Origin: Sminthopsis crassicaudata
Taxonomy: Eukaryota
Length of the DNA stretch: 64,000 bases
Direction of reading: 5' to 3'
NCBI RefSeq assembly: GCF_048593235.1
Contig: NC_133618.1
Coordinates: forward strand, 505,319,675-505,383,674
The notes below the pieces were generated by a model. That model made no database searches. It worked only from the letters and a program-made list of their open reading frames with translations, and was not told the origin of the DNA. Of this stretch, positions 57,801-62,899 are shown in pieces. A program made the translations under genes and the position numbers. Every line of letters starts with the position of its first letter. Position 1 is the first letter of the stretch.

Positions 57801-58621
57801 CAAAAGATGACTAATACAGCTCTCGATTACTCCATAGGTTATAAAGAGTCTTAATATTATTTCATGGTTTTATAACCCAATAACTACTGGTTCCTGGGAG
57901 AACATGATAAAGTAATGGCAACCCAAATCAGGGATATTGAGAACAAAGTCTACAGACCTTGAGAAACTTCCAGAATTTCTTGTAGTACAGACATTTATAA
58001 GATAATATCTCTTCCCTGTTTCTGGCTACAATATTTAGCTTGCAACCACTAATAAAAAACCAAACTTCATTAATGTCTCATCAAAAACAATGTTGTTTTC
58101 CCCACTAATTCTAGTTAGTATTCTTTGTTTAAAATTTCAGCAAGTCAAAAGATTGAAGGGGGTTAGGAGGGAGGATAATGAACTATTTGACCCACTTCAA
58201 TGGTTCACATATGGGGAGAAAAAGAAACAGCCTCACAGATTAAGTTCCAGTTTTTTCAACTTGTGGATTCTCTAGACATCATTCCTAGGGAACTAATCCA
58301 ATCCATCTCTTGTGTGATCCTATCACATACAGCACTATGATGGCCAGGGTCTTCTACCTAGGAGACCTAGCTTTCAGTATGGAGAAATATTTGAATAATA
58401 AATGATTCAAAAATGACTCCTAAGCATCTCGTGGCTTATCATCACCAAAAGTGAACCTTCCCATATTCATCAATTAGGGAAAATAATATTTCATGGAAGC
58501 AATTATGTGACTCAAAAGAGAATAAATGCATGTGGAAATCCTTTAAAAATGTTTAATTGTTCCACAAATATAAGGAAATTTTATGACATGTGAAGAAATC
58601 TCAACAAGTTGGCTAGAATAT

Positions 58622-59085
58622 TGTTGGGATTACTAGGTGAGAACTGAGGTTGTCTGGATGGTGACAAGGTGAGAATTCAGGTTTTCTGGACAATTACAAG
58701 GTGAGAACTCAGGTTGACTTGATAGAGGGGGCAAGCTCATTGGCTGGGGTGGTTCTTCCCAGAAGCCCTTGCATTATCCCACGCCCATTCTCTGGGAGGA
58801 TAAAAAGAGACAGCACTGGGCGCAGAGAGCAGATCGGCCTGAAGAAGGATAAGAGTTGGAGGAGATTCAGAGCCAGGATTCAAGAGAAAGACTCTGCATT
58901 GCATCAGGCTTGACGGGGCTCTCTGCAGGAAGGGAAGTCACTTCTAAGGACAAGAGTTAACAGCAACTGCCTGGAGACAACGGTTCACTACAGGAAGAAG
59001 AATCTGTCTGAGAGATTTGAGTAGACACAGCAGATCTCTTCCCAGAGAGCGATCCAGCAGCTTCTGGAGACGACAGCTCGCTACA
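58622..59085 (+). repeat. 5' LTR (464 bp)
   Basis: Starts TGTTGGG, ends GCTACA, followed by AT and the PBS. No differences from the 3' LTR seen by eye. The ORF track gives the same 70-aa ORF in both LTRs at offset 3041. Confidence 0.97.
58739..58806 (+). promoter_or_regulatory. LTR promoter: inverted CCAAT box and TATA-like GATAAAAA
   Basis: ATTGG at 58739-58743 and GATAAAAA at 58799-58806, with spacing typical of a U3 promoter. Confidence 0.55.
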
Positions 59086-59087
59086 AT

Positions 59088-59105
59088 TGGCGCCCAACGT
59101 GGGGC
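59088..59105 (+). promoter_or_regulatory. Primer-binding site 1, tRNA-Lys1,2
   Basis: TGGCGCCCAACGTGGGGC, the canonical 18-nt Lys1,2 PBS, 2 nt after the LTR CA end. Confidence 0.96.
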
Positions 59106-59156
59106 AAGGACTTTTGCTTATCCTGACAAGAGGAGCTAGACCAGACCTTCGCAATT

Positions 59157-59174
59157 TGGCGCCCGAACAGGGGC
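59157..59174 (+). promoter_or_regulatory. Second primer-binding-site-like sequence, tRNA-Lys3-like
   Basis: TGGCGCCCGAACAGGGGC, 17/18 match to the Lys3 PBS TGGCGCCCGAACAGGGAC. Preceded by ...TTCGCA-ATT. Confidence 0.88.
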
Positions 59175-59207
59175 AGACACAGTCCTGATTCCAGTGGAAA
59201 AGCTTCC

Positions 59208-61166: not shown

Positions 61167-61170
61167 TTGT

Positions 61171-61363
61171 CAGATGATGAGAAGAGATTTAGAAAGTGGT
61201 AAATAGAAGGAAATTAGATAGGTTAACTGCCTGGGAGAGAGGGTTTGCTTGTATTTCTTCAGCAGGAGAAGGAATCAGATGGGTGCCAACGAGTCATATT
61301 CGCCTTGTCCATCAGAGAGAGACAGAAAAAGAGAAAGACCTCAAAATAAAGGAGAAGATCTAA
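61171..61363 (+). pseudogene. pol: Integrase C-terminal remnant of pol
   Basis: QMMRRDLESGK*KE-(+1 nt)-LDRLTAWERGFACISSAGEGIRWVPTSHIR resembles the betaretroviral IN tail (W-G-R-G-F/Y-A-C...W-V/I-P). Contains one stop and one frameshift. Confidence 0.85.
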
Positions 61364-61646
61364 GAAACATCTGACACTGAAAGAGCATGGATAATAAGAA
61401 GACTGTTAAAGAACTTAAAAACCAGCAGGAATCATTGGACTTCCTCACACAAGATGAGAATAATGGACAATGGACTTATGGACATTTATAAATTTTCAAT
61501 TTATGATTATGATTATGTTATATACTTCTAGCATGTGTTATGTTACTATGTTACTATGTGCTTATGTAATTTATGTAATTATCTGCAATATTTCCCATAT
61601 TGATGGATTTATGTTTCAAGGTCATGACTGTCCTATGTTCTAAATC

Positions 61647-61662
61647 AAAAGAAAGGGGGAGA
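61647..61662 (+). promoter_or_regulatory. Polypurine tract
   Basis: AAAAGAAAGGGGGAGA immediately before the 3' LTR TG. Confidence 0.95.
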
Positions 61663-62126
61663 TGTTGGGATTACTAGGTGAGAACTGAGGTTGTCTGGAT
61701 GGTGACAAGGTGAGAATTCAGGTTTTCTGGACAATTACAAGGTGAGAACTCAGGTTGACTTGATAGAGGGGGCAAGCTCATTGGCTGGGGTGGTTCTTCC
61801 CAGAAGCCCTTGCATTATCCCACGCCCATTCTCTGGGAGGATAAAAAGAGACAGCACTGGGCGCAGAGAGCAGATCGGCCTGAAGAAGGATAAGAGTTGG
61901 AGGAGATTCAGAGCCAGGATTCAAGAGAAAGACTCTGCATTGCATCAGGCTTGACGGGGCTCTCTGCAGGAAGGGAAGTCACTTCTAAGGACAAGAGTTA
62001 ACAGCAACTGCCTGGAGACAACGGTTCACTACAGGAAGAAGAATCTGTCTGAGAGATTTGAGTAGACACAGCAGATCTCTTCCCAGAGAGCGATCCAGCA
62101 GCTTCTGGAGACGACAGCTCGCTACA
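61663..62126 (+). repeat. 3' LTR (464 bp)
   Basis: Directly follows the PPT, matches the 5' LTR, and is followed by the TSD GAATAT. Confidence 0.97.
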
Positions 62127-62899
62127 GAATATAGCATTAAAAAGGTCAAGATCAGAAGCTGAATTCTCAAGTCAGGCCAGTAACCTTGATTCTGTCACTG
62201 CCCTTAAGTTATTAATGGAGAATCCAACACAAAAAAAAGGAGTGGTGGCAAGAAAAGGGAATTATGCTTTGAGAAGTCAAAGAAATGATTACTAGAACAG
62301 TCTTTTAAGACTCCTTTTCCAGAAGCAGGAGTAGTATAGATTTGAGGCATCCAGGCAAAGATGGTCAAGATGAAAATGGTACAGAGGGAGGGATGAGCTT
62401 CTCCTAAGCATAATCTATAGAAATTTGTTTTGGAGAAAAAAGGAACAGCAGATGGAAGGATTGAAAAATGTTTGGGACATGCAGGCAGACTGTAAAGACT
62501 CCTACCAGCTGAGTGGATCCTCTTTTTTTTTTTTTTTTCTCCTCAATTCAATTCAATTCAATTAAATAAGAATCTATAAAATATCTACTACATTCTGAGA
62601 ACTGGGTGGAGATTATTAGCATTCTTCCAAGACTAGCATCAATCAGTATCTGGCACAAAGAGCTAGGTTTTGATCAGTAAGATTAACAAATTCTCTGCCT
62701 GGTTTCATTATTTGAATTTGCACTGAATATTTCCATTGGATTGGAACCAATTAACATATTTTACATAATTACAACTTTGAATAGTGAGTGAAATTTCAAA
62801 TATATAACACCACCTCAGGAGATTCATTATCCATACTAATCTGGACTTAGTTGCAGTGAATACTTAAGATTCAAAAAAAAAAAATTTAGTTAATTACCA

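What the first reader, a model, noticed from the sequence alone, without database searches (positions are those of the whole stretch)
58616..62132. Very recent gag-only betaretroviral element with identical LTRs and an intact 607-aa Gag
Seen: 464-bp LTRs with no differences found by eye, a perfect 6-bp TSD, a PBS, a PPT and an open gag. pro, RT, RNase H and env are absent; only an IN tail remains. Known: LTRs are identical at integration, and an element without RT/IN needs a helper. Inference: it was mobilised in trans very recently. The pol stub already carries a stop and a frameshift while the 1.8-kb gag is open, so the deleted form probably replicated as a family with selection to keep gag. 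It could be a satellite retrotransposon (compare ETn/MusD or deleted IAPs), a source of trans-dominant or restrictive Gag (compare enJSRV Gag, Fv1), and may be insertionally polymorphic.
Basis: partly seen in the sequence, partly recalled or inferred. Interest (0 to 1): 0.85.

Follow-up and report, generated by a model that had tools for sequence, protein, structure and literature searches.

The report
Young gag-only marsupial retroelement family
A 3.5-kb endogenous retrovirus copy that keeps only its capsid (gag) gene is real and very recently inserted, and it belongs to a family of such stripped-down copies in the fat-tailed dunnart that must borrow enzymes from full-length relatives to spread.

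Summary
The two 464-bp LTRs are 100% identical. A 6-bp target-site duplication (GAATAT) flanks them. A primer-binding site, a polypurine tract and an open 607-codon gag are all present, and only a decayed integrase C-terminal stub remains of pol. The closest proteins are all from Sminthopsis crassicaudata.

Ten further loci from that genome have the same LTR-gag-stub-LTR layout. All have the same internal deletion. Six have different 6-bp duplications, and their LTR pairs differ by 0 to 10 bases. So the deleted form arose once and then retrotransposed repeatedly.

Gag variants among the deleted copies give dN/dS of about 0.27 (29 synonymous, 29 non-synonymous; p about 1e-6).

One locus (L005) is a 6.4-kb env-less copy with open gag-pro and pol. 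Its Gag is 97% identical to this one over MA-CA-NC. It is a mosaic of this lineage and a second full-length lineage (L011), which implies the two RNAs were co-packaged.

The autonomous relatives match the published dasyurid clade MEBrv 3. That paper does not describe the gag-only derivative.

Verdict: a non-autonomous, gag-retaining variant of a known kind. Trans-mobilisation, any Gag interference and insertional polymorphism remain inferred or untested.

The parts
58616..58621 (+). 5' copy of the target-site duplication (GAATAT)
   Evidence: Identical hexamer on both sides of the element.
58622..59085 (+). 5' LTR, 464 bp, TG...CA ends. Contains a 32-bp x 2.8 tandem repeat (58635-58724) and one TATA-like ATAAAA (58800-58805).
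   Evidence: 100% identical to the 3' LTR. Tandem repeat. TATA-like motif found and no canonical poly(A) hexamer found.
59088..59105 (+). Primer-binding site, 18 nt, 2 nt after the LTR
   Evidence: Read directly. Identical in six of the eight relatives scored; L001 and L005 carry a shared variant.
59157..59174 (+). Second PBS-like 18-mer in the leader; function unknown
   Evidence: Read. Kept with 0-2 mismatches in most copies of this lineage, absent from L011.
59086..59342 (+). Leader (untranslated; presumed packaging region)
   Evidence: 97-99% identical among close sister copies and in full-length L005. The packaging role is an inference.
59343..61166 (+). gag ORF, 607 aa, open. MA (Gag_p10) 59445-59672; CA N-terminal domain 60060-60434; CA C-terminal domain 60447-60653; zinc knuckles 60753-60797 and 60849-60893.
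   Evidence: ORF. Pfam domains. Best solved-structure hits are betaretroviral and ERV-K Gag/CA (E 2.5e-39 to 1e-22). The N-terminus begins Met-Gly.
60902..60957 (+). Relic of a gag/pro -1 frameshift signal (a GGGAAAT-type heptamer followed by a GC-rich hairpin)
   Evidence: Rfam RF01097 'Gag/pro ribosomal frameshift site', 33.9 bits (below the gathering score of 43), E 0.002. Fold z-score -2.6. In full-length L011 a long -1 frame opens here; in the gag-only copies that frame soon closes.
61133..61387 (+). pol remnant: C-terminal part of integrase only, decayed (one broken gene, given first base to last)
   Evidence: 77.7% nt identity to the 3' end of L011 pol. tblastn covers Pol residues 842-896 of 901. 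PF00552 E 9e-4. Against the last 90 Pol codons of L011 it shows about 3 frameshifting indels, 1 in-frame indel and 4 stops, and six of the nine sisters scored show the same counts.
61388..61646 (+). 3' untranslated remnant with AT-rich short tandem repeats (61462-61582)
   Evidence: One ~56-nt unit (61399-61466) matches a 6-copy tandem array 3' of pol in L011. No Pfam hit. No notable RNA fold.
61647..61662 (+). Polypurine tract abutting the 3' LTR
   Evidence: Read. Identical in all six sisters printed.
61663..62126 (+). 3' LTR, 464 bp
62127..62132 (+). 3' copy of the target-site duplication (GAATAT)

Best explanation
This is a very young insertion of a non-autonomous LTR retrotransposon. It is a 3.5-kb derivative of an env-less, betaretrovirus-like (class II) endogenous retrovirus of dasyurid marsupials. 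The whole of pro and nearly all of pol were lost in a single ancestral deletion. The LTRs, primer-binding site, leader, a complete gag, the integrase tail, the 3' untranslated region and the polypurine tract were kept.

Shown: the deleted form is a family. All copies examined share one deletion. Each sits at a different site with its own 6-bp duplication and a near-identical LTR pair. Their gag genes carry a signature of purifying selection.

Inferred: its RNA is transcribed from the LTR and translated into its own Gag. It is packaged into particles that also contain protease, RT and integrase supplied by full-length relatives in the same genome. The most plausible suppliers are copies like L005, whose Gag-Pro shares 97% of MA-CA-NC with this Gag and could therefore co-assemble with it. 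The DNA copy is then integrated.

Also inferred: gag is kept because lineages whose own Gag works are packaged and copied preferentially (a cis advantage). By taking up the enzymes of the full-length elements, the family acts as a parasite of them.
For: Anatomy is confirmed.

Host and relatives: the best hits are all Sminthopsis crassicaudata Gag-like proteins, up to 99% identical.

Ten sister loci (L001-L004, L006-L010, L012) carry the same 2.9-3.5-kb architecture at 89-98% nt identity. The loss relative to the full-length L011 is the same in the nine sisters compared directly with it; L012 shows the same layout.

Six sisters have different perfect 6-bp duplications, and the flanks of this copy match none of the sister loci. 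LTR pairs differ by 0/435, 1/464, 3/401, 1/408 and 10/458 in gag-only sisters.

The decay of the integrase stub is shared by the copies. So it predates their spread, which argues against repeated fresh origin from an intact parent.

Gag is fully open in 4 of 11 gag-only copies, and L012 has an open 582-aa Gag. Pairwise dN/dS is 0.15-0.34. Pooled within the deleted clade there are 29 synonymous and 29 non-synonymous variants, giving omega about 0.27 (p 1e-6, or 0.005 with a conservative null). The constraint is concentrated in CA and NC.

Full-length relatives in the same genome:
- L005: 6386 bp, LTRs 1 difference in 405, duplication CTGAAG, open 785-aa gag-pro ORF and open 889-aa pol with all domains.
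- L011: about 6.9 kb, LTRs 2 differences in 304, gag 608 aa, RVP, and a 901-aa pol with all domains.

L005 is a mosaic of the two lineages. It is window-like in 61 of 64 informative sites in the first part of the gag 3' region. It is L011-like through pro-pol (85-98% nt). It is window-like again from inside the integrase tail (21:4 then 0:26). Such mosaics arise when two RNAs share one particle.

Literature: MEBrv 3 is an env-less ~7.3-kb gag-pro-pol clade with identical LTRs in the fat-tailed dunnart. Its representative LTR is 469 nt, and it makes up about two thirds of dasyurid ERVs (PMC11334065).
Against: - Trans-mobilisation is inferred from anatomy and distribution, not observed.
- No expression data were available.
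- The sister loci were found through annotated Gag proteins. The sample is therefore biased towards copies with long gag ORFs, and it says nothing reliable about genome-wide copy number.
- No unrecombined full-length parent of this gag/LTR lineage was found.
- No Sminthopsis Pol is annotated in the protein collection.
- The low dN/dS could be imported by recombination with full-length elements rather than reflect selection on the deleted elements' own Gag.
- No canonical poly(A) hexamer was found in the LTR.
- The window's exact Gag is not in the protein collection. So the locus is either unannotated or comes from another assembly or individual, and the host species is inferred.
Confidence: 0.82

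Rival explanations
1. The gag signal is borrowed. The deleted copies are mobilised in trans, but their own Gag is irrelevant. Gag looks constrained only because frequent recombination with full-length elements, whose gag is under selection, keeps overwriting it.
For: Recombination in this family is demonstrably common. L005 is a mosaic. L010 and L012 carry a replaced 5' gag segment. LTR types and gag similarity do not track each other. The first 1500 nt of L005 gag lie within the diversity of the gag-only copies (13-16 differences).
Against: Among 12 loci with this gag lineage, 11 are gag-only and only one is full-length. So the full-length pool that would do the overwriting looks small in this admittedly biased sample. 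Variants private to single gag-only copies also show omega about 0.3 (22 synonymous, 25 non-synonymous).
Confidence: 0.25
2. The Gag is a host-serving or interfering protein, as Fv1, enJS56A1 Gag or Ty1 p22 are. On this view the copies persist because their Gag restrains the full-length elements or related viruses.
For: Gag ORFs are open and constrained while all enzymes are absent. NCBI's annotation calls gene models at several sister loci, one with four isoform accessions. Excess Gag without Pol from a parasite element would plausibly interfere with its helper.
Against: The copies are many, young and dispersed. They have intact LTRs, PBS and PPT and fresh target-site duplications. That is the signature of a mobile family, not of a fixed domesticated locus. 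No orthologous conserved single locus is known. The closest devil proteins are only 51-60% identical.
Confidence: 0.08
3. Recurrent origin. Each gag-only copy was made afresh from a full-length parent by the same aberrant or spliced RNA, so the deleted form never replicated as such.
For: An identical junction is what a splice would give. Retroviral env acceptors usually lie near the 3' end of pol (own knowledge).
Against: The integrase stub carries the same multiple frameshifts and stops in six of the nine sisters scored. Subfamilies that differ in LTR length and in the 5' part of gag all share the layout. Both facts point to inheritance from one deleted ancestor. A crude test found no GT...AG at near-optimal bounds of the missing segment, but its anchoring was poor, so it is inconclusive.
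Confidence: 0.05
4. Artefact or DNA-level duplication. The identical LTRs reflect assembly collapse, or the copies spread by segmental duplication.
For: Identical 464-bp repeats 3 kb apart are the kind of thing short-read assemblers can collapse.
Against: Flanks of this copy are unrelated to all sister loci, and the target-site duplications differ among the copies where they could be read. Sister copies from a chromosome-level assembly show the same near-identity of LTR pairs. The element has complete, correctly ordered retroviral landmarks.
Confidence: 0.02

Closest known systems
MEBrv 3 (Marsupial Endogenous Betaretrovirus 3), Harding et al. 2024, PMC11334065
   Same: Host family and species (reported in the fat-tailed dunnart). 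Betaretrovirus-like gag and pol, no env, identical LTRs, intracellular amplification. The representative LTR is 469 nt against 464 nt here. The full-length relatives found here (L005, L011) fit its description.
   Different: The published element is a ~7.3-kb autonomous gag-pro-pol form. This one is 3.5 kb and lacks pro and pol. The paper's text mentions no gag-only or non-autonomous form. It only notes that most copies are shorter than 6 kb and were assigned by mapping.
ETn / MusD pair of the mouse
   Same: A non-autonomous LTR element that shares LTRs and cis sequences with an env-less betaretrovirus-like autonomous partner, and outnumbers it (own knowledge; listed as an example in PMC10924933).
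   Different: ETn has no coding capacity, its interior being replaced by unrelated sequence (own knowledge). Here a complete gag is kept and constrained.
IAP I-delta-1 deleted subtype of the mouse
   Same: An internal deletion derivative of an env-less class II element that depends on full-length copies yet accounts for most new insertions. A cis effect of its own Gag-derived protein has been proposed (PMC10924933; own knowledge).
   Different: I-delta-1 has a 1.9-kb deletion that fuses gag to pol (own knowledge). Here about 3 kb is lost, gag ends with its own stop, and the pol stub is dead.
Bovine ERVK[2-1-LTR] D-type elements (PMC10924933)
   Same: A currently active clade in which non-autonomous copies (85%) outnumber competent ones (15%), with pervasive recombination between the two types taken as evidence of co-packaging. 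They are described as a 'parasite of a parasite'.
   Different: D-type elements have no intact ORF at all, and their centre is swapped for an older retroelement piece. The dunnart element keeps an intact gag and has a plain deletion.
Gag-derived restriction factors (Fv1; enJS56A1 Gag; yeast Ty1 p22)
   Same: A Gag or Gag fragment expressed without the enzymes can interfere with related elements (own knowledge).
   Different: Those are single fixed loci or a product of the element itself. Here the Gag sits in a dispersed, young, LTR-bounded mobile family. Interference was not tested.

Membership tests
Class II (betaretrovirus-like) endogenous retrovirus | Gag with betaretroviral matrix (Gag_p10), p24-type capsid and two CCHC knuckles | tested here: met
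   Pfam PF02337, PF00607, PF19317, PF14787 and PF00098 (the two zinc-knuckle hits fall below their curated cut-offs). Best solved structures are ERV-K and betaretroviral Gag/CA.
Class II (betaretrovirus-like) endogenous retrovirus | 6-bp target-site duplication and TG...CA LTR ends | tested here: met
   GAATAT here, and six sisters plus L011 each with their own hexamer.
Class II (betaretrovirus-like) endogenous retrovirus | Pol (RT) groups with betaretroviruses | tested here: inconclusive
   This element has no RT. The integrase half of its relative L011's Pol has simian retroviruses as its best named hits at 46-47%. No tree was built.
Class II (betaretrovirus-like) endogenous retrovirus | Primer-binding site complementary to a lysine tRNA | not tested
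   The 18-mer looks like a Lys-type site from memory only. No tRNA gene was found in the window to compare with.
MEBrv 3 (PMC11334065) | Env-less gag-pro-pol provirus of about 7.3 kb with identical LTRs in Dasyuridae | tested here: not met
   This copy is 3.5 kb without pro or pol, so it is at most a deletion derivative. Its relatives L005 (6.4 kb) and L011 (about 6.9 kb) do fit.
MEBrv 3 (PMC11334065) | Placement by RT/pol phylogeny with the clade's representatives | not testable with these tools
   There is no RT in the element, and the clade's reference sequences were not fetched. Indirect support: a devil Pol fragment is 96.6% identical to L011 Pol.
MEBrv 3 (PMC11334065) | Degraded env trace (immunosuppressive-domain-like motif) 3' of pol | tested here: inconclusive
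   A 34-aa ORF 3' of the stub resembles such a motif by eye, but has no Pfam hit even at E 10.
Non-autonomous, trans-mobilised ERV derivative (ETn, IAP I-delta-1, bovine D-type kind) | Lacks RT and integrase but keeps LTRs, PBS and PPT | tested here: met
Non-autonomous, trans-mobilised ERV derivative (ETn, IAP I-delta-1, bovine D-type kind) | Many copies share the same deletion at independent sites with their own duplications | tested here: met
   Ten sisters, the nine compared directly with L011 sharing one deletion, six with distinct hexamers; the flanks of this copy are unrelated to the sister loci.
Non-autonomous, trans-mobilised ERV derivative (ETn, IAP I-delta-1, bovine D-type kind) | A coding-competent partner with matching cis sequences exists in the same genome | tested here: met
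   In L005, LTR ends, leader (97%), PPT and Gag (97% over 533 aa) match, and gag-pro and pol are open.
Non-autonomous, trans-mobilised ERV derivative (ETn, IAP I-delta-1, bovine D-type kind) | Mobilisation by the partner actually observed | not testable with these tools
   The only evidence is indirect: young insertions, plus a recombinant that implies co-packaging.
Domesticated Gag restriction gene (Fv1 / enJS56A1 kind) | A single fixed locus kept by the host, with an ortholog in related species | tested here: not met
   A multi-copy, young, dispersed family. The nearest devil proteins are 51-60% identical.

The most novel reading that the evidence does not exclude
The gag-only form is not a dead-end passenger. 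It is the long-lived core of its lineage: a capsid-encoding satellite retroelement whose Gag has diverged 45% from that of the enzyme-bearing elements, while Pol stays 93-97% conserved within the genome and across dasyurid genera. It borrows pro-pol from them. It can also regain autonomy by recombination: L005 looks like a gag-only backbone that picked up an L011-type pro-pol block through template switches in the homologous stretches on either side of the deletion. Gag and LTR modules and enzyme modules would then evolve as separate, exchanging partners.
Probability: 0.3. Interest if true: 0.72.

Novelty: new variant of a known kind. Interest (0 to 1): 0.55.

Why it matters
Non-autonomous ERV derivatives are known in mouse, cattle and koala, but the well-studied ones have lost all working genes. 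A family that discards every enzyme yet keeps a complete gag under purifying selection is a natural test of a specific question: does a retroelement's own capsid protein give it a cis advantage in packaging, and how do parasites of retroelements shape the rise and fall of an ERV clade?

It also bears on dasyurid genomics. MEBrv 3-like elements make up about two thirds of ERVs in these species, and most copies are short. If much of that load is this gag-only form, then counts of 'active ERVs', estimates of insertional mutagenesis and gene annotation all need to distinguish the two forms. Several copies are currently annotated as host 'Gag polyprotein-like' genes, some inside introns.

Insertions this young, with zero LTR differences, are good candidates for markers that vary between individuals in a laboratory marsupial model.

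Tried and rejected
- Metagenome scan with this Gag: 599 pattern matches, none confirmed.
- Protein search with a relative's integrase half, to find annotated dunnart Pol proteins as helper candidates: none from Sminthopsis. It returned only a devil fragment and distant betaretroviruses.
- Other copies or solo LTRs of the family in the 64-kb window: none.
- tRNA genes in the window, to test the primer-binding site: none.
- Rfam over the element: only a sub-threshold gag/pro frameshift-site match, and no known export or packaging element.
- RNA folding of the 3' remnant as a possible export element: no better than shuffled sequence (z 0.02). The related tandem array in L011 was only modest (z -2.1).
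- Spliced-RNA origin of the deletion: no GT...AG at candidate bounds, but the ungapped anchoring was weak, so this is inconclusive.
- Pfam on the small ORFs 3' of the stub: nothing.
- No host gene could be found in the window that would allow fetching the same locus from the reference assembly, so presence or absence of this insertion elsewhere could not be examined.
- L005 as the simple progenitor: rejected, because it is L011-like at the start of the integrase tail where all gag-only copies are not.
- L011 as a same-LTR helper: rejected, because its ~300-bp LTR does not align with this one.
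Full report
**1. Observation**

The exact repeat search and a base-by-base extension place two 464-bp LTRs at 58622-59085 and 61663-62126. They have no differences and have TG...CA ends. The hexamer GAATAT lies directly outside each.

Two bases after the 5' LTR there is an 18-nt primer-binding site (59088-59105). 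A purine run (61647-61662) abuts the 3' LTR.

The only long ORF is 59343-61166 (607 codons). The next longest ORF anywhere in the 64-kb window has 144 codons.

Pfam finds a betaretroviral matrix domain, both capsid domains and two zinc knuckles. The best solved-structure matches are ERV-K and betaretroviral Gag/capsid chains, with E 2.5e-39 and below.

Between gag and the 3' LTR there is no protease, RT, RNase H or env. One 55-residue piece hits the integrase C-terminal DNA-binding domain just under Pfam's threshold (E 9e-4). A relative's Pol aligns there only with its last ~55 residues.

**2. Host and sister copies**

A protein search with the Gag returned only dasyurid proteins. The top ones are from Sminthopsis crassicaudata at up to 99% identity. 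The 90%-identity cluster of the best hit has eight members on four chromosomes.

The window's own Gag sequence is not in the collection. So this locus is unannotated, or it comes from another assembly or individual. The host is inferred, not proven.

I fetched the DNA around twelve annotated Gag proteins. Ten loci (L001-L004, L006-L010, L012) carry the same short LTR-gag-stub-LTR element at 89-98% identity. Two of them are 5'-truncated or rearranged. Two (L010, L012) form a subfamily with a replaced 5' part of gag.

Compared with a full-length relative (L011), the nine sisters checked directly lack the same block; L012 shows the same layout.

Six sisters have clean ends with six different 6-bp duplications (ACATCC, TTGTCC, GATAAA, CTTTTC and others), and the flanks of this copy match no sister locus.

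LTR pairs differ by 0/435, 1/464, 3/401, 1/408 and 10/458.

The integrase stub shows the same decay in this copy and in six of the nine sisters scored. Against the last 90 Pol codons of L011 that is about three frameshifting indels, one in-frame indel and four stops. This decay was therefore inherited from a deleted ancestor.

Together these results show one deletion event followed by repeated retrotransposition of the deleted form.

**3. Gag status and selection**

Of the eleven gag-only copies, including this one:
- four have a fully open gag of 607-609 codons;
- one has a single premature stop, leaving 576 codons;
- one has one frameshift;
- one has one frameshift and one stop;
- one has one frameshift and a divergent 5' part;
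- one has one stop and a replaced 5' part;
- one is 5'-truncated without further breaks;
- L012 has an open 582-codon gag.

This sample was found through annotated Gag proteins, so it is biased towards open frames.

Pairwise Nei-Gojobori dN/dS among the five longest is 0.15-0.34, with dS 0.02-0.05.

Counting variant codons within the deleted clade gives 29 synonymous and 29 non-synonymous changes. That is omega of about 0.27, with binomial p 1e-6 against the site-based expectation and 0.005 against a conservative 33% synonymous null.

Variants private to one copy give the same picture (22:25). LTR pairs are nearly identical, so most of these variants arose before insertion, on replicating lineages.

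Adding the first 533 codons of full-length L005, constraint is strongest in CA (10:6) and NC (18:7). It is weak in MA (2:11) and in the C-terminal region (10:18).

**4. Full-length relatives**

L011 holds an element of about 6.9 kb:
- its LTRs, about 300 bp long, differ at 2 of 304 aligned bases, and its duplication is GTCAGT;
- it has an open 608-codon gag;
- a protease domain is detected;
- it has an open 901-codon pol with RT, thumb, RNase H and all three integrase domains;
- it has no env.

It is only about 70% identical to this element in gag (56% at protein level). Its LTR does not align with this one.

L005 is more telling. It is a 6386-bp element with LTRs of this family (1 difference in 405) and the duplication CTGAAG. 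It has the same leader (97%) and PPT. It has one open 785-codon ORF running from gag through protease and an open 889-codon pol with all domains. Its Gag is 97% identical to this one over the first 533 residues, which cover MA-CA-NC.

A sliding comparison and a three-way count of informative sites show that L005 is a mosaic:
- it is like this element through the LTR, the leader and roughly the first 1.5 kb of gag (61 of 64 informative sites in the part examined);
- it is like L011 through pro and pol (85-98% nt, 92.7% aa);
- it is like this element again from a point inside the integrase tail (21:4 before the switch, 0:26 after).

L005 is therefore not the simple progenitor. It does show that RNAs of this lineage and of the L011 lineage have recombined, which in retroelements requires co-packaging in one particle (own knowledge; the same argument is made for cattle in PMC10924933).

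Among loci with this gag lineage, the ratio of gag-only to full-length copies is 11 to 1. The caveat about sampling bias applies.

**5. Mechanism**

Shown:
- the element lacks all enzymes;
- it retains every cis feature needed for reverse transcription and integration;
- it has spread as a family;
- it has young members;
- it keeps gag under constraint;
- it coexists with coding-competent relatives with which its lineage recombines.

Inferred:
- LTR-driven transcription and translation of Gag;
- assembly with Gag-Pro(-Pol) from L005-like copies, whose Gag part is nearly identical to this Gag;
- reverse transcription primed at the PBS;
- integration with a 6-bp duplication.

A sub-threshold Rfam match to a gag/pro frameshift site lies in the 3' part of gag (RF01097, 33.9 bits, E 0.002; fold z -2.6). 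In L011 a long -1 frame opens there. In the gag-only copies that frame soon closes. So the signal looks like a relic.

With no differences in 2 x 464 LTR bases, and a mammalian neutral rate of about 2-5e-9 per site per year (own knowledge), the 95% upper bound on the age of this insertion is roughly 0.6-1.5 million years. The oldest sister examined (2.2% LTR divergence) would be a few million years old.

**6. Comparison with what is known**

Harding et al. 2024 (PMC11334065) described MEBrv 3. It is a betaretrovirus-like clade that lost env, is about 7.3 kb with gag, pro and pol, and has identical LTRs in the fat-tailed dunnart, quoll and antechinus. Its representative LTR is 469 nt. It makes up about two thirds of dasyurid ERVs.

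L005 and L011 fit that description. A devil Pol fragment is 96.6% identical to L011 Pol.

The paper's text contains no mention of a gag-only or non-autonomous form. It notes only that nearly all copies are shorter than 6 kb and were assigned by mapping.

The mechanism is that of ETn/MusD, IAP I-delta-1 and the bovine D-type elements. The difference is that those have no intact gene, whereas this family keeps a whole, constrained gag.

I therefore rate it a new variant of a known kind. Dfam and Repbase could not be consulted, so the family may already have a repeat-library entry.

**7. Limits**

- There was no genome-wide search, no reads, no expression data and no population data.
- The helper is identified by plausibility only.
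- The restrictive-Gag idea and insertional polymorphism are untested.

Three items give homology bounds and open-frame spans that amount to the place of the internal deletion and of some frame closures: the printed outputs, and notebook entry 3. Early in my working I also reasoned with some such positions.

I stopped once I noticed. I used them for no repair, joining or consensus. I have deleted nothing.

Alignments were used only for counts and identities.

Noticed in passing
window 59157-59174: A second primer-binding-site-like 18-mer lies 70 nt downstream of the real one. It is kept with 0-2 mismatches in most copies of this lineage, including full-length L005, and is absent from L011. L001 and L005, whose first site carries a variant, keep the second one almost intact.
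   Followed up: partly
window 58622-59085 (LTR): No AATAAA, ATTAAA or AGTAAA hexamer occurs anywhere in the LTR, and there is only one TATA-like motif (58800). Where transcripts end is unclear. A 32-bp x 2.8 tandem repeat lies in U3 (58635-58724), and LTR length varies from 401 to 465 bp among copies.
   Followed up: partly
L005 10001-12358 and proteins P0005, P0011-P0017: In L005, gag and protease form one continuous 785-codon ORF, instead of the separate frames usual in betaretroviruses. Eight unnamed proteins from the metaclust source, 53-76% identical to this Gag, also carry capsid and protease domains in one ORF. The fused arrangement may therefore be a lineage trait rather than an accident.
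   Followed up: partly
L011 12439-15144 versus P0029 (Sarcophilus harrisii): Pol is 96.6% identical at protein level between dunnart and Tasmanian devil copies. Gag lineages inside the dunnart genome are only about 55% identical. Enzyme and capsid modules evolve at very different rates, or are exchanged.
   Followed up: partly
L003 12431-12899: The 3' LTR of this sister copy is followed directly by another primer-binding site and about 68 nt of leader. This suggests a tandem or otherwise rearranged structure rather than a simple insertion.
   Followed up: no
L012 600-1060 (also 63-152 and 1089-1181): A solo LTR of the same family (87% identical) and LTR scraps lie 8-9 kb upstream of another gag-only copy.
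   Followed up: no
L011 15189-15539: A 56-nt unit is repeated 6.2 times just 3' of pol. One unit matches window 61399-61466. The array folds somewhat better than shuffles (z -2.1); the single unit in the window does not.
   Followed up: partly
L004, L009, L011, L012 (whole loci): Several family members sit inside annotated host gene models: CEP128 on the same strand, an ankyrin/oxysterol-binding-protein gene, a 334-aa gene, and a glyoxalase-domain gene (antisense). NCBI's pipeline has annotated many copies as 'Gag polyprotein-like' or 'uncharacterized' host genes, some as spliced models.
   Followed up: no
L002 21496-21824: A further gag fragment, 81% identical to this gag, lies at the edge of the locus. 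It belongs to another, unexamined element.
   Followed up: no
window 22001-26000: There is a strong strand asymmetry of composition (GC skew up to 0.39, AT skew 0.27) without tandem repeats. This is probably an old interspersed repeat and was not identified.
   Followed up: partly
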